From Basidiobolus meristosporus CBS 931.73 (taxonomy: Eukaryota; Fungi; Basidiobolomycota), in NCBI GenBank assembly GCA_002104905.1, contig MCFE01000478.1:1-64000 (forward strand): 64,000 nt of DNA. The letters are read 5' to 3'. The translations under genes were made by a program, and so were the position numbers. Positions within the stretch are counted from its first letter, which is position 1. The number at the start of each line of letters is the position of its first letter. Positions 1,758-39,300 of the stretch are shown here, piece after piece. The notes below the pieces were generated by a model. That model was given only the letters and a program-made list of their open reading frames with translations, did no database searches and had not been told where the DNA came from.

Positions 1758-2767
1758 TGCGAGTAAATTGGACGATATGATAGAATTGCCAGCTCCACAC
1801 CAGGAACATGAAATAACCCCGAACCCAAAGTAACTTCAAAGTAAATAACGCTATATACCTGATTTCGTAGCACCGAGGCATGTAATTTACGTTTACCATC
1901 AACTGACAGGTAACTTGTTTAGTATTAATGATCACCATGTTATATACACTACAACTAGGCCGATTCTATTTCGGAGTCACAAGTGAATAGATTGGACGCA
2001 CCCTGCTGATCCTGAGGTATTTCTGTTGATTCGTGCGCTTTATCTGAACCATAAAATAGACCGCCACATGCCATGTTGCTTTTGCTCTGATTGGAGGGGG
2101 CGCTCAGAACATCAATTGTTTCCCAATCCAATTTATTCATTCAGTAATAACACTCCATGCTATTCATGGACGTCACGTTCTCACCATAGATAGTTACAGA
2201 AACATGGGATGTGCATCGAGAGCTGTCTAGGGCATTCTGACTGTAGCCATGGTCATCCGAGACGATGTGCAACATGATGCCACGTAGCTAAGCCTCAGGG
2301 TATTGTTAACAAAGCACCTCTAAAACATCACTAAGTAGCAAGACGCCTTCACACTTTAAGCAGCTATTAGTCTTGTTTAGTTAGCCTGTACAACATCCAA
2401 GCCTTGGCAGGGATTACACAAACCTAAAGAATATAACCAGATTGAGTTAATATAATATGTGACATCCATGGAACTAGAAATCTTGCGCCCGGTGTCGACG
2501 TAGAAGGAACAATGGATAGGCGCTAGCAAAATTTGACTTGGTTCAAATAAGATCCCGGGATGATGTAAGTTGGCCGAAAATGAAAGATGTTAAGCAAACA
2601 AATAGACTTCATCCAATGGTGGAATAGTGGAGACAAACCTTGGGGAGATTTACCAAACCGATCCGATCACCAGCGCCTGTGATTTAGACCAAATGTGGAT
2701 GGTCAACGCGCTTATAAATGTGGTCAGGGAGAGGCCATACTTCTTCAGTCATACAACTTTATTGACA

Positions 2768-6662: not shown

Positions 6663-9260
6663 CTAATTGGAAATTTGGAATGTGCTCGAATAGCCGGAAT
6701 GAGAGCTGATCTTTCCAAATGCTTTATTTGCCCCAAAGTATCCAATGCGATAGATCCCAGCTAGGCGGGCGAATGGGAAAAGTTTAGTTTAAACTCAAAT
6801 ACAAGCATGCTACGATGACTTACGTTTCACATTGGGTTCGATCTGCCATTGGATGGTCACGTTGCTTTCGGCGATTCCTTGACGTTTCCATTGAAACTTG
6901 GTGCACCAATCTCCATCATTTCGAACCACTTTCCAATCATCGGATGTTTGCATCTCAACAGTAAGAAACGTCTCTTCCAGAGCCACTTTGTTTTTAGGGT
7001 GGCCACCTACGAATGCCACGCTCACCGTATCTCCTATCTTGTAAGTGGCTTGAGCATCCTTTAGAACATCTCCAAATTTCTTTCCGATGGGAGCGGTGTC
7101 CAGAACAACTCCAGTTTGAAGGTTGATGGCATTTCGAGTCAGATCTGGTGTGCTGATCAGAGAAACAACCGGCTTTCCTTGGATCATTGCTGCGGCCACC
7201 TCCTTGTACAACTGTATATAGCCATCCAAGGTGTTGGGGCCATAGATAGTGGAGGCCCCCTCATACCGCTGAGCTGAATACTCCTCCGGAGTTGTAACGT
7301 AACTTGAGTAAGTGTTCGATGGGCCTGCCAGAACTACGATTGGATTCTTCAAATCGCTCGTTTCGGCAAACACTTGTCCAATCGCCTCTCGTAATCGACG
7401 GCCACTCATCGTGGTGAACTCACCAGGGACCACCGCAATCACCAGCTGTCCAACTCGCAGGATCTGGATATCAACTACGCGTGGCTGCCACATATAGGGT
7501 AACTTGATTTCTCCCGTGGCCAGAAGGACTGGCTTAGGAGATTGGCATTCCTTCAGCTCCTCACTTGGTTTCGTAATAAAAGCACGGACTACATCCCAGA
7601 ATGGGTGGCTGACATTGGAGTCTCCTTGGGTGAAATCAAACTCACCAGGGCCTGGGTGTGAGAGTAGGTTGGTTAGTTGTGGCCGTGAGAAATTGGTGCA
7701 AAAAGGCATACCATCGGTAGTACCAGCAGCAAACGAATAACCCATGGCAGGTTTGCATAGTCTTTTCGTGGTTGAGTTTCCGAGTTTGACTTCCACTTTG
7801 GTCAGATCTACAAACTGGTGCCTGAAATCGACGGGTCCTTTGACGTATTCTTTAGCCTCATTCATCAATCTCTTCGCCGTTTCGTATTGATAGGAGCCGA
7901 TAATCCTAGTAGACTCCACATCGCCTCCGGTTTCGTAGCCAGGCCCTCTAGATGATGTGATATCGATGGATTTGTGAATACAACATACAAGCCTAGGTTA
8001 CAAAACTATATTACCTAGCAACACAAAGCTCGTTTTTGCCGTTACACGTACTTGTCTTATAGTCGCAGGGTAATCCGCTATCAAGACAGCGTGGCCCCTG
8101 AGTATTTGGAGAGACATCGCCCATGTTGGACTGAGCAAAGCCCGCAACAAACTTGCCTGTTCCTGGTAATATGTCGTCGCCATTCATTTCTCTTTCAAAA
8201 GCATAAGCAGCATATCCCTTGTTATCTCCGCTAATCAAGAGGTTTTCGTTGTTCATAGAGGTGCAATGGACTGCATACCAATTGAGAATACCCAATGGCT
8301 CCCCAGCCTCGTTGGTGAATTTGACCAGCCTCATCTCTTGGTCTGTATTGTGCTTGTAACGTGCTCGCTCAGACTGAGGGTTCTGATCGTATGCCCAGGG
8401 AGATCTGTTGATGTTTCCGTTCTCCACATCTCCCGCAGAGGTGGTTATGAATCCGGGAGTCATGTTTTCATGAGCTCGTTGGATTGAATTCACGATACCG
8501 TTAACCACCGGACGAGTAGCGTCTTCAATAAATCCAAGATTGGTAAACTGATATAACACATATTGGTGCCAACCACCTGGACCACTATGAGTGTGTGTGC
8601 CGGTAAGTGCTACATTGTTGTCATTGTACAAATCGCCATAGAGCTGTTTTAATGCTTCGATAACCCGCCTGCGAACCACTTGAGAGATCATTCCCAAATC
8701 TGCCGACACGTAGGCAATTCGATTTTCTGTCGCATTCGGATCACTGACAATGAAAGCTACAAGGTCATCAGCGAACACGTCAACCTACTTTTCAACTGGT
8801 AGGATAATGTACCTCTGGATCGTAATCTTAAATGGATACCGGCAGTTTTTTGGCTGGCTTTCGCATAACCCTGGTTTGGGAAGAAGTATCAGTATCGTCC
8901 TGTATGCGTCAAATTGAATTTTCTTACCATCATGTTAATTTCGGCTATATCACAAATTGTTCCATGTCGTATAGTGTTAGCTGGATATAATCATACATAA
9001 TCAAATACGAGTATCATACCAGCTGGTCTGTAAGGAATCAAAGAAACTCTTGTTAGTAAAACCGAGCTTGAAATGAACCTCAAGTTAACTTTAATTACCC
9101 AGTAATGTCTGCGATGCCCACGCCGATCTACTCCCAATAGAAAGTGGATGGTTACGAGGTGGACTATGATTCCCGCAAGCAAGCAAAAACTTACCATGTA
9201 ATCCGCAGCGAGCACAGCATTTAGTGCAATAAGCACTAAGAATATTGTCCACTGAAGCAT
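6663..9260 (-). CDS. Neutral/alkaline non-lysosomal ceramidase, secreted, multi-exon
   Basis: Signal peptide MLQWTIFLVLIALNAVLAADY, LTGTHTHSGPGG, WYAVHCTSMNN, NMGDVSPN, GTTDG, VPGEFTTMSGRRLR, YEGASTIYGP. Confidence 0.93.
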
Positions 9261-9628: not shown

Positions 9629-12600
9629 TCACTTTTGTCTTTTGCTACGGCGTGATTTAGCGGTTGAGGTGCGCTTGGATCCAGGCGTGATCTTACGTGG
9701 TGGGTGTTCTCGTTTTTTTGTTGGGCAGTTTTTTGCCAAGTGACCCTGCTGCTCCATTCAATCCTTCAGTTCATCCATTCTAAAATTCCTGTCTCAATGC
9801 TGTGCAATGTACCTTATTGCAAACAAAGCAATTATACTCCCTAGGATTCTTGGTACGAGCCGAAGGCGCATGCTTTGGGCAGTTTCTTGCGATATGTCCT
9901 ACCTATCATTCAAGTACCGCTGAACATTGAGCTATCAATACAACAATATAAACTGTTCATTTACCTGACCACACTTATAACAAATCTCCGAGGAGCCTGG
10001 CAGCGAGATGCCGCCGCTATTACACTCATTTTCATCACGAGTTTCAAGCCACTGGAAGAAGGTACATCTTCCATTGGAGTTTAAGCAGGCGAAAAATGAT
10101 TTCCCTTTGTTTGGCCCATCCTTTGAAACAGTCCTGATAGTAGTCAATAGACCACAGTCACACACAGGGTTGTTTTCGTTTAAAGGATTATTCTGAAAAT
10201 AAAGTTGCTTAGTGCCCAAAATGGTTACTGCGAAGGTAAACTGCTATTTAGGACTCAACCCTGAGCTTACCATCACCACTTCAGAGACAATAGTTTCGCC
10301 CGTCAATTCCTGTCTGTTGCCCTCTAAATATTCCATCGAAGGAAACGATGGTACTTCGTCTTTCCATTGAAAAAAATCACAATTTTGTCCTTTAGGTTTC
10401 GGACAACCATAGAATTGTCTGCCAGTATTGGGTCCTCTTTTGCGTACAGTCTTGGCGCTGGCACGATCACCACAAGAACATTTAGGAATATTGGCATCGT
10501 CTATAACATTGCTGTTAGTGGACATCCTGAAATCTGCACTGTTGTGGTGAGCTTCCACTCTATGACCATTGTTTTTTGGTACATCAACGTTTGCTAAAAC
10601 AGGATCACGTTCGCAACATGCCTTGATCACGATAATCAGTACATGAAACACGGATTGTATATATACGTTATTCGCTTACCTGAAGGGTACAGGAATCTTC
10701 AAGCCATTGAAAGAAATCGCATCTATCTGCATCTTGGGGTTTAGAACAACAGAAAAATTGCCTCCCTTGATTAGGACCCTCTTTCTTCACTGTTCTGGAA
10801 ACTGATTGCAGCCCGCAGTAGCATGATGGAATAGAGCCAATCTCTGCAAGAACCGGGCAACTAACATTGATGTTCTTATATCTCTCGTTAACAATACCAT
10901 TCTCGGCGTGATCTACTCCTGATCCTTCATCATTATCCTAATGGAGAGTGAGCACTTCATTAACGATTTTAAATGGTATGTGATAACACATACTTGAAAC
11001 AACTGATTCGGTTCGAGCTCCTCCGGATTATGGCCAAAATACCTCGCTAATGCCTAAACAAGGAATGAATATGCATCAAAAAACCGAGAAGCAAATCTGT
11101 TCCTACTTGCACAAGTTTGAAACTTTGATCATTGGTTTTGAGAAAAACATCTCGATACATCCCAACTCCTTGTCTTACGACCAACTCTTTGGTTTGTGAT
11201 CCCTCGCAGATTTTTCTCATGTTAAGCTCCATCTTGATTTCAGTAGTTGACTGTTAGTTGCATTCTAATCGACGTATAAACAGTAACGGGGCTTACTTCT
11301 CTTCTAAGAAACGGTTTGGAGAGAGATGTATTAAAATCAATACCATCATATCCTTCCACAAGGGCGATGCCTAATGTGGAGGGCACAAAATAGCTCGCTT
11401 CTTTGAATGCATAAGCGCGATCCAGAACCTTCTTGATATGTTCGTGGATTGTTGCATCAGTGCCTAAGCCGAAGATCAATCTACAACCCTCAGAATCAAG
11501 GACTGTTATTCCAACTAACCTATTCCATTTTTGTCCATTACTGCAATCAAGTCAGCCTCGGTTAAGAGAGAGGGAGGACTGGTTTTTCCCTCAGACATTT
11601 CGATGCTATCAGGTATAAATTGCTCGCCCTTCTGGAAGACTGGGATAGTGGTTTCACTCCAGCGATCGTATGGATAAATTTCAAGGTAATTTCTGGCAAT
11701 AATCATCAAACCTATGTACCAAGGGTAGTGAATACTAATTAATTGGGGTATGCGTAGTTGTTTACCCTTTGTAGTGAAGACTTCGTCGGAAATGTTGATC
11801 TCCACAGTGGTTTCATGGCCTTTAGCGTTGTCGGAACATGCAGCAAGAAACCTCCTAACAACAAACTCATAGACTTGTCGATCATCGCCAATCAAGTCTT
11901 TTGCCCAGGCTGTAGGGTGTATTGGCGGGTGTGCCTTGTCGTTATTTTTTCCTGTTCGTGGGGATTTGAACCCACCCGTCAAAAGCCTATTCACGGAATA
12001 ATAGGATCAGTTATAGGCGTTTCTCATTGATCAATAACCAGTATCACATTTTAGCATATGGACCCCACTGCTGATCGTGGACTTGTTTTTCGATTAGTGG
12101 TAGAAGCTGGAAGCTATTATCGAATTGATCAGTTTCAGTTCTGGGGTAACTTATGAAACCACGGTTATATAAACTCTCAGCAATCTTGTGTCAAAATAGA
12201 TGTTAGCAAACTGAGACGATAGATGTACCAATACTAAGTCACCGTCATAATTCGGTCAGAAGTCATTTTGAGAAAACGTGCGCCAGATTTTTGGAGCTCA
12301 ACTGTAGTTAATGGTAATGGCTTCCTGATTTTATGAGCGAGTGCAGATAAATATGTAGTTGAGGAGATCTGAAAGCAGCAAAGGCGGTTTACCATTTACT
12401 GGTAGGCTTGGATTTCACTCCAGAAACCGTGGCCATGGAGTTTTCAACGCATTGTTCATACAAGATAAGACAAAACAATTGACAGTACATGGACCCTCTT
12501 TGCCAATTGAATCTGGCTAAACCATCAGCTCGATTGACACACACATCTATTTTCCAGAAATCCTCAGGGACGAAATTCTCGACTCGGAGGAACTGATCGA

Positions 12601-34316: not shown

Positions 34317-34862
34317 TCACGTGTTGGCGGCAATGACTGGGATTTCATTGATCAGCTTGGGTTTTTTCCGAGTGCTCACTCTGTGGCAGAGGTACTGCTC
34401 GTTCTGGGGATCGAGCGCTCGCTTCTTCACCCCACTCAACGAGTCCCCCCGTATATCGGCGGTTCTTACCACCCAGTGGATGCTTTGTAGGCCAGGATAG
34501 TTCAGCACAGTATCCATTAGCCATTCTCGAACACTCAACCCTTCATAGGCCTCCGAGATGTGGATGTTACATAGATAAGCTAGCCGAATATAGTCCGTGG
34601 CGACTCGGGCAAATCCGATTTGATAGACGGTCGGCATCCCAAGACTGCCATATTCTTTAGGCAATGTGACAAACAGACCAAAGCACAAAGAAAAGTTTAG
34701 GATGCGTTTGAAGTTCGCCCTGCACAGCGGCTCTTCACTTTCATTCAGCGAGGAGATGTATTCGTAGACGAAGTTTAGATCCAGGTCTCGAGGGTCAGTA
34801 CTGATGAAATAGTTCCCTTTCGTCCAGGTGTACGCGCTACGTGTTACTGAAGATATGCTCAT
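34317..34862 (-). CDS. GNAT-family acetyltransferase-like protein, intronless
   Basis: YFISTDPRDLDL, FSLCFGLF, QIGFARVATDY..AYL, WLMDTVLNYPGLQ. The acetyl-CoA loop looks degenerate. Confidence 0.8.
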   Translation of the reverse strand: MSISSVTRSAYTWTKGNYFISTDPRDLDLNFVYEYISSLNESEEPLCRANFKRILNFSLCFGLFVTLPKEYGSLGMPTVYQIGFARVATDYIRLAYLCNIHISEAYEGLSVREWLMDTVLNYPGLQSIHWVVRTADIRGDSLSGVKKRALDPQNEQYLCHRVSTRKKPKLINEIPVIAANT

Positions 34863-35362
34863 ATTTTCCACCGAAATGAATAGAATAGAGGAAAGGGATA
34901 TGCTCTACTCTAGAATCAATCGGGCAAAGGCGACGGTGTGGCTTTATAAAGCTACAAGGTGGTTTGAAACTGGAGATTTACGCAAACAAGAGTAGTCACA
35001 CACGCGTACTACTGCTGATGGGGACATGACTACATCCATCTAGATACACCGAGGTGATTTGCCTGTTGGTATGGGCGTGAGGATGATGGATCTGGCTGAA
35101 TCTTGTGTGGAGGAAATGGAGAAGCACGAGATGGACTATTGGGTGGATGATACATGAGGGCGGGGTGTTTTTTGACACATGAGTTTTGATAGCGGGGACT
35201 TGGTTTGACACATGAGTCCGCATCTTTTTCGATCATCGTGTGACTTCAGCGTGTGAGAAACACCGAAGAGAACAACAAGAATCTGGAGAACACCAACAAT
35301 AGATTAGGATTAGGGTTAGGGTCGCGCGGATCCAATCGGGGAGGGGAACGATGTTCAGGGGT

Positions 35363-35412
35363 GATTTTTTCTCGCTCCTCAGGCTGAGGGAATTTTTTTC
35401 TCACACCTCAGG
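35363..35412 (+). promoter_or_regulatory. Duplicated RRPE-like A/T-tract motif upstream of the putative snoRNA host gene
   Basis: gattttttctcgctcctcagg and aatttttttctcacacctcagg, followed by a CT-rich tract and a GTGAGT donor at 35481. Confidence 0.45.
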
Positions 35413-35510
35413 TAAAGCCTTAAATTCGGTCGGTGTGCCACCTCCATTCCTCCTCTCTCTTGGTCATCAGAATTCTGAAGGTGAGTAAACAAGCTACATT
35501 TTGCATGATC

Positions 35511-35602
35511 CATCACAATGAGTAGGAATGATGTTCAAAATATTGCTTTTTGAATTTCTTCACCTGAACATAAAATGTTGAGAAATGACACCCCTGACCT
35601 AT
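35511..35602 (+). ncRNA. Intronic box C/D snoRNA, snR47/U36(SNORD36)-like guide for LSU Am2220 (yeast numbering)
   Basis: Box C ATGATGT, D' CTGA, C'-like ATGTTGA, box D CTGA, terminal stem gtagg/cctat. The 14-nt guide TTGAATTTCTTCAC is complementary to conserved LSU GTGAAGAAATTCAA (recalled from memory), and the +5 rule hits the second A of GUGAA. Lies in intron 35481-35673 (branch gctgac, acceptor tgtag). Confidence 0.85.
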
Positions 35603-35685
35603 CAATGTTGAACATAATGGTTTACCATATAAATGCACAAGTACGATTGCTGACCAAGTTTCCTTCACTGTAGGCTTCTTCTGCT

Positions 35686-35733
35686 GTACAATTGGACGGT
35701 TCCGACGGGAGGGTTCAACTCCCTCTGTTGTAC
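35686..35733 (+). other. tRNA-like mini-structure 1 (closing stem + GG hairpin + T-arm, no anticodon arm)
   Basis: GTACAAT/GTTGTAC stem; GGA-CGGT-TCC; GAGGG-TTCAACT-CCCTC. Confidence 0.6.
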
Positions 35734-35740
35734 TTTCATT

Positions 35741-35826
35741 TAAGATGATGAACTTTAAAAAATCAAAAGGCTTAACCATTGAGATATATTCATTTATATC
35801 GTTGATACCTTGATTGTTCTGATTTC
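35741..35826 (+). ncRNA. Second box C/D snoRNA candidate, target not established
   Basis: Perfect box C ATGATGA at 35745-35751 and box D CTGA at 35819-35822 (78-nt span), with a weak terminal stem. Located next to a confident snoRNA. Confidence 0.65.
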
Positions 35827-35836
35827 AACCATTTTT

Positions 35837-35882
35837 GCACATGGGTGGTCCCATCATTGCAGGTTCGATTCCTGAGTTGTGC
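35837..35882 (+). other. tRNA-like mini-structure 2 with the same architecture
   Basis: GCACA/TGTGC stem; ATGGG-TGGT-CCCAT; CAGG-TTCGATT-CCTG. Confidence 0.55.
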
Positions 35883-35924
35883 TATTCCTTGCTGTGTGTA
35901 GTTGTGCTATTCCTTGCTGCGTGT
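35875..35924. repeat. 2 x 25 bp tandem repeat
   Basis: agttgtgctattccttgctgtgtgt / agttgtgctattccttgctgcgtgt. Confidence 0.85.
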
Positions 35925-36371
35925 TGCACTGACTAAACGAACAAATAAATCCTCTAATTTAAAAATAATAATGGACCATAATGTATGATGGCTATGACTG
36001 AGTGTTTTGGGGAATGTAACCATATAATGACTGGCCCTAAAGATTTCCATCGCGTATCGTCATTATCCAGCGCAGTTATGCAGCCAAATCGAATTAAAAA
36101 AAACATTTTTTTTTTGAATCCGAGATATCTTACGGATCGGGAAAAAAAAACTTGGTGAAAAAAAATCAAGATACACTACACGCTGACAACGAGTAGCATT
36201 GTGTACTGCCCGAGCTTGAACCCAAAGCGGTGCGTTAGCTACTGATAGACTTTGCCTCAAGCTGTGGAGTTCGTTCCGGTGTATTTATTTGTTAAATAGA
36301 ACTGTTTCCCTGAGTCCCCCTTTTCGTTTCGTATAAACGTGAAAAACCTACACATAGGTTTGTAAACCAAC

Positions 36372-39300
36372 ATGAACATTTCAAACCCGGTTAACGCCGA
36401 GATCAATGCTGTATCTTTCTCCTTCTACGACCCAGAGGAGGTAAAGAAGATCTCGGTAAAGCATATAGTCAATCCCCAGCTTCTTGACAACTTGAATCAC
36501 CCCACCAAAGGTGGTCTGTATGATCCAGCTCTCGGCCCTTTTACCAAAAACCATGTGTAAGTGACTTTCTCCTTGAAACAAATATAGCGACCGGTATTAA
36601 CATGTTACGTTATCCTCAATTAGCTGCGCTACCTGCTCTCTCGACTACTTTTCGTGCCCTGGTCATTTCGGTCACATTGAGCTCCCCTGCCCAGTCACGA
36701 ATCCTTTAGTTTTCAAATATATGTTCGGATTGATGAGAGCCAAATGTTTTTACTGCCATCGCTTCAGAACTTCTCGTGCTGAGGTATTTTTGCATTGGTT
36801 TTGGCTTTTCACCCGCAGCGCATAACCTCCGTGATATTTCAGAATGCTCGTTTCATAGCCAAGCTACAACTGCTTCAATCTGGACTGGTTTTGGAGGCGT
36901 TGGAAGTTGACAACATGGTTCCCAATTTCAAGAGCAAGAAGGCTGCTGGTGAGGAAGAAGAAGAGTCCATTGAGGAATTGAAGGTGGAGACCGAGGACGA
37001 ATATGTCGAGAGAATCGGTTAGTTGAAGCAAATGGATTTCTTTGGTAGTTTGAGATGATTTACTAATAGATCCATTACAGAGATGTTTGTTAAGAAATCC
37101 CTCGAGAATGCCTCTGAGAGTGCCTCCAAGGATTACAAAATAACCCTTATCAACGAAGAAAGAAGAAAGGTCCAAGCTGAATTTATTAAGCGTGCCTGCG
37201 GTAAAAGAAGATGCGACAACTGTTCTGGATATGCTCCTGTTCTTCGTAACGACGGGTACACCAAGGTTTTCAAGCAGCCCCTTCCAAAGAAATACCAGGC
37301 TGTGATGGATGCCAAGGGTATGGTAGAATCAGACGTTCTTCAGAAGAAAGCCAAGCAACAAAAGCGTCACTATGCCGACACCGAAATGATGGATGTCGAC
37401 GAGGAGGAAGAGGAGGCCACCGAGGATATGGAGATGGAGGTAGCAGCCGAAAAGAAGACTGCTCATACCTTCATGACCCCTCTTCACCTTCGTAACCATA
37501 TTGGTCTCTTGTTTGAGAATGAAGCCGTCATCACCAACTTGTTGTATGGCAAGTACAACCCCATCAGTGGTACATACGCCACCAAGGCCAGCCCAAATAT
37601 GTTCTTCATTGAAGTTCTTCCTGTGCCTCCAACTCGCTTCAGACCAGCTTCCGTCTTTGAAGATGAGATCATGGAAAACCCTCAAAATGTGTATCTCGGC
37701 CAAGTGTTGGGCACCTGCAACCGCCTCCGTGATATTAACGTCACTGCCAACGGTGGCAGCGATAAGATTGATGGCGCCAGTTTGGCTAGCTCCGACACCA
37801 GATTGTTCTCCAACCTCATCAATACCTGGATCCAGCTTCAGCAAGATGTCAACAACCTTATTGACAGTTCCAAGAACCCCAACCTGGGTAAGAACGGAGC
37901 CGCCCCTCCCCCAGGTATTCGTCAGACACTTGAGAAGAAGGAAGGTCTATTCAGAAAGCACATGATGGGCAAGCGTGTCAACTACTCTGCTCGTTCCGTC
38001 ATTTCTCCTGATCCCAACATCGAAACCAGTGAAATCGGTATTCCACCAGTGTTCGCCTCAAAGTTGACCTACCCTGAGCCAGTGACCCACTACAACGTCA
38101 AGGAAATGCGTCGCGCCGTCATTAATGGACCCGATCAATGGCCTGGTGCTTCTCATGTTCAGCATGAGGATGGAACCTTGACATCCTTGGGTAACCTGAG
38201 TCTGGAGTCCAGAATTGCCTTGGCCAATCAACTTCTCACCCCACAAGAGACCTCTACCAATGCTTCTGCCGGTGGCGCGTTTACTCCTCGGGTGACTGGG
38301 GTAAACAAGAAGGTTCTTAGACATCTTAAGAATGGTGATCTTCTTCTGTTGAACAGACAGCCTACCCTACACAAGCCCTCTATCATGGCACACAGAGCCA
38401 GAGTTCTCCCTGGCGAGAAGACCATTCGTATGCACTATGCCAATTGTAACACCTACAACGCCGATTTCGATGGTGATGAAATGAACATCCATTTCCCCCA
38501 GAACGAAATCGCCAGAGCCGAGGCGCTTCTTATTGCCAACACTGACTCGCAGTACCTCGTACCAACTAACGGTAGTCCCCTCCGTGGTTTGATCCAGGAT
38601 CACGTAGTAACAGGGGTGTGGATGACGGCTAAGGACACCTTCTTTACTCGCGAAGAGTACCAACAAGTCATCTATGGTGCCTTGAGACCCGAAGAAGACG
38701 AGAGTGGTAACGGTAAGATTGACACCGTTCCTCCTGCCATCTGGAAGCCTCAGCCTCTTTGGACCGGTAAACAAATCATCTCCACGATCTTGAAGAACCT
38801 TACCAAGGGACTTCCACAAGCCAACGTCAAGTCTAAGGCCAAGGTGCCTGCCAAATACTGGGGCCCAGGATCCGAGGAGCAAAACGTCATTGTCATGGAT
38901 GGTGAGTTGCTCTGTGGTGTTCTCGATAAGAGTCAGTTTGGTGCCTCTGCTTTTGGTCTGGTCCACTCGGTGTATGAGCTCTATGGACCATCATATGCTG
39001 GTAAATTGCTCAGCATTTTCGGCAGACTCTTCACCAAGTATGTCCAGATGCGCGGTTTTACCTGTCGTATGGATGATTTGCGTTTGACCAGCGAAGGTGA
39101 TCAATGGAGACGTGACTTGCTGGAGAAGGGCAAGTTCTTTGGTCGCGATGCATCCAGAGACTACGTTGGATTGAAGAATCTTGAGGAAATGAGCCAACAA
39201 CAGATCGAAAGTGAGTACAAACACAGAATGGAGGAGGTTCTTCGTTCCAACGAGAAGATGGCCGGTTTGGATGCCGCCATGAAGTCCAAGATGAACGGCT

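What the first reader, a model, noticed from the sequence alone, without database searches (positions are those of the whole stretch)
35686..35882. Candidate new processing system: a C/D snoRNA bracketed by two anticodon-less tRNA mimics
Two elements with different sequences share one architecture: closing stem, short hairpin with a YGGU loop (D-loop-like GG), short linker, then a T-arm. Their loops are GGTTCAACTCC (35712-35722) and GGTTCGATTCC (35862-35872), both exact GGTTCRANTCC matches. Element 1 ends 11 nt before box C, and element 2 starts 14 nt after box D. RNase Z cleavage after element 1 and RNase P cleavage before element 2 would release the pre-snoRNA, like mascRNA/t-element or mitochondrial tRNA punctuation. 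This snoRNA has a weak terminal stem, whereas the neighbouring one has a strong stem and no mimics. Plant tRNA-snoRNA dicistrons use a real tRNA; I know of no case using paired mimics. Alternatives are Pol III B-boxes (as for yeast snR52), Rnt1-type NGNN tetraloop signals, or tRNA relics.
Basis: partly seen in the sequence, partly recalled or inferred. Interest (0 to 1): 0.8.

Follow-up and report, generated by a model that had tools for sequence, protein, structure and literature searches.

The report
snoRNA flanked by two tRNA-like folds
In the fungus Basidiobolus, a small nucleolar RNA gene is bracketed by two conserved mini-tRNA-shaped elements with no working anticodon arm, which most likely act as cutting signals for the tRNA-processing enzymes that free the RNA, though no RNA data were available to prove it.

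Summary
Two exact GGTTCRANTCC T-arm motifs (35712-35722, 35862-35872) lie in two ~47-nt three-helix folds, E1 (35686-35733) and E2 (35837-35882). E1 ends 11 nt before box C and E2 starts 14 nt after box D of a box C/D RNA.

The genome is Basidiobolus meristosporus. The locus is a non-coding snoRNA host gene between a GNAT-like gene and RPA190. A SNORD36-like snoRNA sits in its first intron.

The unit E1-snoRNA B-E2 recurs at two B. ranarum loci, an ortholog and an old paralog. There E1 and E2 are 72-90% identical, like the snoRNAs, while spacers are 30-55% apart from one 10-nt spacer at 70%. Their loops never vary. Most stem substitutions keep pairing, four of them changing both partners of a pair; in E2 a few cells are unpaired.

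One point is new. In B. ranarum, E1 carries a third hairpin where the anticodon arm would be, so it is a decayed cloverleaf. The window copy has cleanly lost that arm.

ARAGORN and Rfam call neither element a tRNA.

Best reading (about 0.45): they are RNase P and RNase Z cleavage signals that release an exonic snoRNA. The main rival is a Pol III promoter role. No RNA run was listed, so cleavage is untested.

The scan has no other note of this design in this genome.

The parts
35354..35425 (+). Promoter-proximal motifs of the non-coding host gene: TTCAGGGGT plus a T-run, then the TATA-like TTAAAT at 35420-35425
   Evidence: The same motif order is seen upstream of exon 1 in L002 and L003. Coordinates. 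Promoter function is inferred.
35481..35673 (+). Intron 1 of the host gene: 5' splice site GTGAGT, branch-like GCTGAC at 35649-35654, 3' splice site TAG
   Evidence: A GTAAGT/GTAAGC 5' site and a TAG|G 3' site occur at the same places in L002 and L003; a CTGAC branch motif is in the window and L003 and CTAAT in L002. Splicing was not observed directly.
35521..35605 (+). snoRNA A, a box C/D RNA of the SNORD36 type, inside intron 1
   Evidence: Rfam SNORD36 scores 27.2 bits, below the gathering score of 30. Identity across the three copies is 80-83%. It has box C ATGATGT, box D CTGA and a terminal stem.
35674..35685 (+). 12-nt leader between the intron 3' splice site and E1
   Evidence: The sequence is not conserved, but its length is short in all copies (11-14 nt).
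35686..35733 (+). E1, a tRNA-like element: 7-bp acceptor-like stem, 3-bp hairpin with CGGU loop, 5-nt linker, T-arm with loop UUCAACU, and one unpaired nt before the 3' strand
   Evidence: all 45 stem cells pair, with 1 compensatory and 3 wobble changes. B. ranarum copies carry an extra hairpin at the anticodon position.
35744..35823 (+). snoRNA B, a box C/D RNA: box C at 35745-35751, an invariant 24-nt guide/D' stretch at 35762-35785, an internal hairpin, and box D at 35819-35822
   Evidence: Identity across copies is 74-86%. The boxes and the 24-nt stretch are invariant and the internal hairpin covaries. Rfam gives only weak snR77/SNORD96 hits.
35832..35836 (+). T5 run between snoRNA B and E2
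   Evidence: L002 has T8 at this place and L003 has no run of T4 or more. Its meaning is open: it could be a Pol III terminator.
35837..35882 (+). E2, a tRNA-like element with no third arm in any copy: 5-bp closing stem, 4-bp hairpin with UGGU loop, 5-nt linker, T-arm with loop UUCGAUU
   Evidence: 92.9% of stem cells pair and 3 pairs changed on both sides. The L003 copy has a 7-bp closing stem.
35876..35925 (+). 25-nt tandem duplication that repeats E2's 3' closing strand
   Evidence: It is absent from L002 and L003.
35944..35949 (+). AATAAA within the shared stretch ACAAATAAATC, a possible poly(A) signal of the host transcript
   Evidence: Shared with L002 but not L003. Function is inferred only.

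Best explanation
The locus is a Pol II-transcribed, non-coding snoRNA host gene. Its first snoRNA (A) is released from an intron in the usual way. Its second snoRNA (B) lies in the downstream exon, where two tRNA-shaped RNA structures bracket it. These structures keep the acceptor-like stem, the T-arm and a tiny GG hairpin that can dock on the T-loop. Those are the parts that form the tRNA 'elbow' and acceptor/T stack recognised by RNase P and RNase Z. RNase P would cut at the 5' edge of each element (about 35685/35686 and 35836/35837). RNase Z would cut one nt past the 3' edge (about 35734/35735). This would free a pre-snoRNA B with roughly 10-nt and 14-nt tails, which exonucleases then trim back to the snoRNP. 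Shown here: the structures, their conservation and covariation, their fixed position around the snoRNA, and that the anticodon arm is dispensable. Inferred: the transcript, the enzymes and the cleavage sites.
For: - The unit E1-snoRNA B-E2 is kept in the same order at three loci, the window, B. ranarum L002 and B. ranarum L003.
- E1 and E2 are 72-90% identical between copies, like the snoRNAs (74-86%), while spacers and introns are 30-55% apart from one 10-nt spacer at 70%.
- Loops CGGU/UGGU and the T-loops never vary, linkers vary freely, and stems change in pairs. E2 has 3 double-sided changes, reached by only 9 of 500 shuffles. In E1 all stem cells pair.
- RNAalifold predicts the same folds on its own.
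- The third arm of E1 is present in both B. ranarum copies with different sequences and 3-5-nt loops. It is cleanly deleted in the window copy while the rest stays intact. The function therefore does not need an anticodon arm.
- The paralogous B. meristosporus locus L004 has lost the cluster. Among the loci I could fetch, the window copy is the species' only one, which fits its being functional.
- E1 begins 11-14 nt after a conserved intron 3' splice site in all copies, so it lies in the host transcript.
- No GT occurs between E1 and box C in any copy, and no AG occurs between box D and E2 in the window. snoRNA B therefore cannot sit in a canonical intron between the elements.
- Literature: RNase P needs the acceptor stem but not the anticodon domain. 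Plant snoR43.1 is released from a tRNA-Gly-snoRNA precursor by RNase P and then RNase Z (PMC3858429). tRNA-like structures in human lncRNAs and plant mitochondrial transcripts are RNase P substrates (PMC4125048).
Against: - There is no RNA evidence: no RNA run was listed.
- Only three copies are available, so the covariation statistics are weak.
- The acceptor/T stack is not canonical: one unpaired nt separates the T-stem from the 3' strand in E1, and one or two do in E2.
- E2's closing stem is only 5 bp in the window and 4 bp in L002.
- The D-like hairpin is far smaller than a real D-arm.
- A T5/T8 run right after snoRNA B in two copies looks like a Pol III terminator.
- Only one locus is known. 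Other snoRNAs noted in this genome are intronic.
Confidence: 0.45

Rival explanations
1. Pol III unit. E1 is the internal promoter (B box plus a degenerate A box) of a dicistronic gene, tRNA-like element plus snoRNA, transcribed by RNA polymerase III and ended at the T-run before E2. This is how plant tRNA-Gly-snoR43 genes and yeast SNR52 work. E2 would be a second, separate small Pol III gene or a TFIIIC site. RNase Z would still separate E1 from the snoRNA.
For: Both B boxes are perfect. T5 in the window and T8 in L002 lie directly after snoRNA B and before E2. There is no run of T4 or more between E1 and the snoRNA in any copy. Plant precedent: PMC3858429.
Against: No A box lies within 2 mismatches of TRGCNNAGTGG in either element. 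The distance from A-box position to B box is about 20-27 nt in the window, against about 44 in tRNA genes. L003 has no T-run after the snoRNA and has a T5 inside snoRNA B, which should stop Pol III early. E1 starts 11-14 nt after a conserved Pol II intron 3' splice site. A DNA promoter does not explain compensatory changes in the closing stems.
Confidence: 0.2
2. snoRNA B is intronic like its neighbours, in an intron that starts inside E1 (GTAC at 35730) and ends inside E2 (CAG at 35859-35861) or beyond it. The conserved elements would then serve splicing or intron folding rather than tRNA-type cleavage.
For: A GTAC/GTAT and a CAG|G are present at these positions in all three copies. Other snoRNAs noted in this genome sit one per intron. 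The 5' splice sites in this genome are variable: GTAAGT, GTATTT and GTTAGT.
Against: These dinucleotides are conserved as parts of the stems. GTACTT, GTACCA and GTATTC lack the usual G at position +5. The only conserved branch-like motif is box D itself. Splicing does not explain a perfect T-loop, an invariant GG loop or covarying closing stems.
Confidence: 0.1
3. DNA-level TFIIIC sites, of the 'extra TFIIIC' or insulator type, between divergently transcribed genes, with no role for the RNA fold.
For: There are two exact B boxes in an intergenic region between divergent genes. The comparison with yeast ETC sites is from my own knowledge and was not tested.
Against: Conservation extends well beyond the 11-nt B box to stems and the GG loop, with pair-preserving changes. 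Both elements keep a fixed position and strand relative to the snoRNA after relocation next to UBA1 in L003.
Confidence: 0.07
4. Functionless relics of tRNA genes or of tRNA-headed SINEs that happen to lie beside a snoRNA.
For: The genome carries tRNA-headed SINEs whose anticodon arm is replaced (earlier notes). E1 has visibly lost an arm.
Against: Identity equals that of the snoRNAs, while flanks have diverged to 30-55%. Most stem substitutions keep pairing. The elements survived a duplication that, judging by synteny, is older than the split of the two species. No further copies occur in about 122 kb of Basidiobolus DNA.
Confidence: 0.05

Closest known systems
Plant dicistronic tRNA-Gly-snoR43 genes (Kruszka et al. 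2003, as summarised in PMC3858429)
   Same: A box C/D snoRNA lies directly downstream of a tRNA-shaped element. Release is by RNase P followed by RNase Z.
   Different: The plant unit uses a genuine, functional tRNA on one side only and is a Pol III gene. Here both sides carry non-tRNA mimics, the unit lies in a spliced host gene, and the organism is a fungus.
MALAT1/mascRNA and NEAT1 (MEN beta) tRNA-like 3' ends (Wilusz et al. 2008; cited in PMC4125048)
   Same: A tRNA-like fold in a Pol II non-coding transcript is used as an RNase P/RNase Z site. The anticodon arm is degenerate and the T-loop keeps the tRNA consensus.
   Different: It is found in vertebrates, has a single element, and makes the 3' end of a long RNA. 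Rfam's models gave no match at E up to 10 here. Here two elements bracket a snoRNA.
Plant mitochondrial t-elements (Forner et al. 2007, PMC1920247; PMC3858429)
   Same: Reduced tRNA mimics, some lacking the anticodon and D domains, are used to cut neighbouring RNAs out of longer transcripts.
   Different: They are organellar and flank mRNAs, and there is no sequence relation.
Yeast SNR52 (Pol III snoRNA with A/B-box leader) - from my own knowledge
   Same: A C/D snoRNA is preceded by a removable leader carrying a B box and followed by a T-run.
   Different: I know of no closed tRNA-like fold or downstream second element reported for SNR52. The Pol III signals here are inconsistent between copies.
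Synthetic polycistronic tRNA-guide RNA arrays for CRISPR - from my own knowledge
   Same: A small RNA bracketed on both sides by tRNA units is released by the cell's RNase P and RNase Z.
   Different: It is an engineered design using full tRNAs. This would be a natural counterpart built from reduced mimics.
Mitochondrial tRNA punctuation
   Same: Flanking tRNA folds define the ends of the RNA between them.
   Different: It is organellar and uses real tRNAs.

Membership tests
Canonical tRNA gene | Cloverleaf with a 7-nt anticodon loop, detectable by tRNA finders | tested here: not met
   ARAGORN finds no tRNA in the window or in L001-L004. Rfam gives nothing at gathering score. The best sub-threshold hit is tRNA-Sec at 19.9 bits against 47, for E1 of L002 only. 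The window's E1 and all E2 copies have no third arm. The B. ranarum E1 third arm has a 3-5-nt loop.
Canonical tRNA gene | T-arm with the GTTCRANYC loop consensus and G53-C61 | tested here: met
   exact in all six elements.
mascRNA/menRNA family (Rfam) | Match to the family's covariance model | tested here: not met
   No hit at E up to 10 in the local scans.
RNase P / RNase Z substrate (tRNA-like processing signal) | Acceptor-like stem stacked on a T-arm, with the D/T elbow present; anticodon domain optional (PMC3858429) | tested here: inconclusive
   All these parts are present and conserved. However, 1-2 unpaired nt interrupt the stack, the D hairpin is minimal, and E2's stem is 4-5 bp in two copies.
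RNase P / RNase Z substrate (tRNA-like processing signal) | RNA ends at the element borders, or cleavage in vitro | not testable with these tools
   No RNA run was listed.
Plant-type dicistronic tRNA-snoRNA Pol III gene | A genuine tRNA upstream of the snoRNA | tested here: not met
   E1 is not a tRNA.
Plant-type dicistronic tRNA-snoRNA Pol III gene | A and B boxes at tRNA spacing and a T-run terminator after the snoRNA | tested here: inconclusive
   The B box is exact. The A box has 3 or more mismatches. A T5/T8 run is present in two copies, absent in L003, and L003 has a T5 inside the snoRNA.
Box C/D snoRNA (the RNA between the elements) | Box C RUGAUGA near the 5' end, box D CUGA near the 3' end, and a conserved guide before D or D' | tested here: met
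   The boxes and a 24-nt stretch are invariant in three copies, and the internal hairpin covaries.
Box C/D snoRNA (the RNA between the elements) | Identified methylation target or membership of a named Rfam family | tested here: inconclusive
   Only weak snR77/SNORD96 hits at 20-21 bits. No Basidiobolus rRNA was at hand.
Rnt1 (RNase III) snoRNA processing signal | NGNN tetraloop capping a long (about 14 bp or more) double-stranded stem | tested here: not met
   The loops CGGU and UGGU fit NGNN, but the stems are 3-4 bp. The stem-length requirement is from my own knowledge.
SINE or other dispersed repeat | Many dispersed copies | tested here: not met
   Copies occur only at the syntenic positions within about 122 kb of Basidiobolus DNA. 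The whole genome could not be searched.

The most novel reading that the evidence does not exclude
Basidiobolus, and perhaps other early-diverging fungi, may use reduced, anticodon-less tRNA mimics as a general nuclear 'punctuation' system to cut exonic small RNAs out of Pol II transcripts. That would be a natural version of the engineered tRNA-guide RNA arrays. The released ~48-nt mini-tRNAs might persist as stable small RNAs with a role of their own, as mascRNA does.
Probability: 0.15. Interest if true: 0.85.

Novelty: new variant of a known kind. Interest (0 to 1): 0.62.

Why it matters
tRNA-shaped cleavage signals are known from vertebrate lncRNAs, plant mitochondria, and plant tRNA-snoRNA genes that use a real tRNA. 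A fungal nuclear snoRNA bracketed on both sides by reduced mimics would extend this in three ways.

- It would be a new route of snoRNA release, beside introns, Rnt1 cleavage and independent promoters.
- The three copies act as a natural deletion series. One copy of E1 lacks the anticodon arm and two keep it, and E2's closing stem has 4, 5 or 7 bp. This points to what eukaryotic RNase P and RNase Z minimally need in vivo.
- It would be a natural precedent for the synthetic tRNA-flanked guide-RNA design.

I found no report of this arrangement in the searchable literature. That library covers open-access papers only.

Tried and rejected
- **RNA evidence.** The look-up of sequencing runs listed no run for 35250-36450, so read laying could not be used.
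- **Assembled transcripts.** An exact-protein look-up of the antisense 88-aa ORF over the locus found nothing.
- **Metagenome scan for E2-like elements.** No match.
- **Metagenome scan for snoRNA B homologs.** Five chance hits in coding DNA of unrelated contigs and no snoRNA.
- **Third B-box match at 11962.** It lies in a topoisomerase exon.
- **A 'third snoRNA' at about 35985-36075.** It has box-like motifs but is not conserved in L002 or L003, so I dropped it.
- **Telomere-like repeat at 35310-35321 as a conserved promoter element.** It is present only in the window copy.
- **Rnt1 signals.** Stems are too short.
- **SINE or relic.** Rejected on conservation and copy number.
- **B. meristosporus paralogous locus L004.** The cluster is absent, so it gives no fourth copy.
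- **Covariance model.** I did not build one. With only about 122 kb of Basidiobolus DNA at hand, a descriptor scan answered the same question.

Full report
**Where this is.** The largest ORF next to the finding encodes the largest subunit of RNA polymerase I. Its best database match is Basidiobolus ranarum at 94% identity. Earlier notes of this scan name the genome as Basidiobolus meristosporus. The finding lies in the 1.5-kb gap between a GNAT-like gene (34317-34871, minus strand) and the start of RPA190 (36372, plus strand).

The two GGTTCRANTCC motifs, the two three-helix folds, and the 11-nt and 14-nt distances to boxes C and D are all as described.
- The motif is expected 0.28 times in the window and occurs three times.
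- The third copy (11962-11972, minus strand) lies in a topoisomerase coding exon and is chance.
- A stricter descriptor (T-arm, 6-bp closing stem, GG hairpin) finds only E1 in the window and gives 0.05 hits per shuffled window.
- Folding energies alone are unremarkable.
- ARAGORN and Rfam at gathering score call nothing here.

**Gene context.** Upstream of E1 is a box C/D RNA of the SNORD36 type at 35523-35602. It scores 27.2 bits, just under Rfam's threshold. It sits inside an interval with a GTGAGT 5' splice site (35481), a GCTGAC branch motif and a TAG 3' splice site (35671-35673). Genuine introns of the neighbouring RPA190 gene use similar signals. Earlier notes say that snoRNAs in this genome usually sit one per intron of a non-coding host gene. 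The finding is therefore the downstream part of such a host gene, and E1 starts 12 nt after the intron ends.

**Relatives.** I fetched three related loci through the GNAT-like neighbour.
- L002 is the B. ranarum ortholog and has the same gene order.
- L003 is a B. ranarum paralog in which UBA1 replaces RPA190.
- L004 is the B. meristosporus counterpart of that paralog.
- L002 and L003 both carry the whole unit in the same order: intron with snoRNA A, E1, snoRNA B, E2.
- L004 has lost the unit.
- L003 and L004 share the RPA190-less gene order and an 82%-identical non-coding stretch. The duplication is therefore probably older than the split of the two species. The GNAT protein identities do not give a clean tree.

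**Conservation.** Between copies, E1 is 73-90% identical and E2 is 72-85%, the same range as snoRNA A (80-83%) and snoRNA B (74-86%). The intron flanks, the two spacers and the downstream DNA are mostly 30-55% identical in a forced alignment, with one 10-nt spacer comparison at 70%.
- Within the elements, the loops (CGGU or UGGU, and both T-loops) never change, and the linkers change freely.
- In E1, all 45 stem cells pair. There is one double-sided change and three changes between wobble and Watson-Crick pairs.
- In E2, 92.9% of stem cells pair. Two closing-stem pairs and one hairpin pair changed on both sides, a count reached by 9 of 500 shuffles. Sliding the partners by 1-3 columns drops pairing to 24-57%.
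- RNAalifold predicts the same helices without guidance.
- Three sequences are few, but this pattern is that of a structured RNA with functional loops. A bare DNA motif would not produce it.

In both B. ranarum copies, E1 has 15-16 extra nucleotides between the GG hairpin and the T-arm. They fold into a 5-7-bp hairpin with a 3-5-nt loop, giving a small cloverleaf. Rfam's tRNA-Sec model even aligns to it end to end, far below threshold at 19.9 bits against 47. The two hairpins differ in sequence but both pair.
- The window copy has lost exactly this arm and nothing else.
- E2 has no such arm in any copy.
- E1 is thus a decayed tRNA-like cloverleaf whose anticodon arm is dispensable.
- Because L004 lacks the cluster, the armless copy is the only one found for this species among the loci I could fetch.

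**The RNA in between.** snoRNA B has an invariant box C and box D and a 24-nt invariant stretch ending in a D'-like box (35762-35785). It also has an internal hairpin whose sequence differs but still pairs in all three copies. I could not identify its target.

**How it most likely works.**
- The parts kept are the acceptor-like stem, the T-arm and a GG loop able to dock on the T-loop. These are the parts RNase P and RNase Z recognise, and the anticodon domain is not required (PMC3858429).
- tRNA-like folds in human lncRNAs and plant mitochondrial transcripts are proven RNase P substrates (PMC4125048).
- A plant snoRNA is released from a tRNA-snoRNA precursor by RNase P and then RNase Z.
- There is no GT between E1 and box C in any copy, and no AG between box D and E2 in the window. 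A normal intron therefore cannot release snoRNA B.
- In the window copy its terminal stem is weak.
- I therefore favour, at about 0.45, cleavage at the borders of E1 and E2 followed by exonuclease trimming.
- By analogy with tRNAs, RNase Z should cut after the unpaired base following the stem, at about 35734/35735.

**Rivals.**
- *Pol III promoter role (about 0.2).* It fits the perfect B boxes and the T5/T8 run after snoRNA B in two copies. Against it: neither element has an A box within two mismatches, and the box spacing is short. L003 lacks the T-run and carries a T5 inside the snoRNA. E1 also follows a Pol II intron directly.
- *Intron starting inside E1 and ending inside E2 (about 0.1).* It would use poor splice sites and leaves the tRNA features unexplained.
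- *TFIIIC-only DNA sites (about 0.07) and dead relics (about 0.05).* Both fail to explain the paired substitutions and snoRNA-level conservation.
- *Rnt1 signals.* Excluded by the 3-4-bp stems.

**What could not be done.**
- No RNA run was listed for this stretch, so expression and RNA ends are untested.
- The Basidiobolus genomes could not be searched as a whole, so I cannot say whether the design recurs elsewhere.
- Two metagenome scans gave nothing useful.
- The scan's notes hold no other instance in this genome.
- Three literature searches found no description of such an arrangement.

**Verdict.** This is a real, conserved and unusual arrangement. It is best seen as a new variant of tRNA-like processing signals, and the mechanism still has to be shown at the bench.

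Noticed in passing
window 35303-35322: A telomere-like stretch containing two tandem TTAGGG repeats lies about 130 nt upstream of the host gene's putative start. It is absent from the B. ranarum copies. Whether it is a Tbf1-type promoter site or an insertion is unknown.
   Followed up: partly
window 35354-35425; L002 about 2650-2680 (minus strand); L003 about 8890-8930 (minus strand): A conserved promoter-like motif pair, TTCAGGGGT plus a T-run followed by TTAAAT(AG), lies upstream of exon 1 of the snoRNA host gene in all three copies.
   Followed up: partly
window 35523-35602: snoRNA A carries the stretch GAATTTCTTCAC before a CTGA box. This equals the SNORD36 consensus guide shown by Rfam, although the total score (27.2) is just under the gathering score of 30. 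It is probably an unannotated SNORD36-type ortholog.
   Followed up: partly
window 35876-35925: A 25-nt tandem duplication repeats the 3' strand of E2's closing stem, giving a second possible pairing partner 25 nt downstream. It is specific to this copy.
   Followed up: no
L004 3685-4907: The B. meristosporus paralogous locus (UBA1-GNAT) has lost the whole snoRNA cluster that its B. ranarum counterpart L003 keeps.
   Followed up: yes
window 36092-36367 and L002 1621-1887: The RPA190 upstream region is 72% conserved between the two species. It includes an A8-CA-T10 palindromic A/T run and a GGGAAAAAAAAAC stretch. These are probably promoter or 5' UTR elements.
   Followed up: no
window 11962-11972 (minus strand): An exact B-box match lies inside a type IA topoisomerase exon. 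It is a coding coincidence.
   Followed up: yes
L003 about 8425-8445 (minus strand): The B. ranarum paralog's snoRNA B has a T5 run and a diverged second guide, while its first guide and boxes are intact. The two guides may be under different constraint.
   Followed up: no
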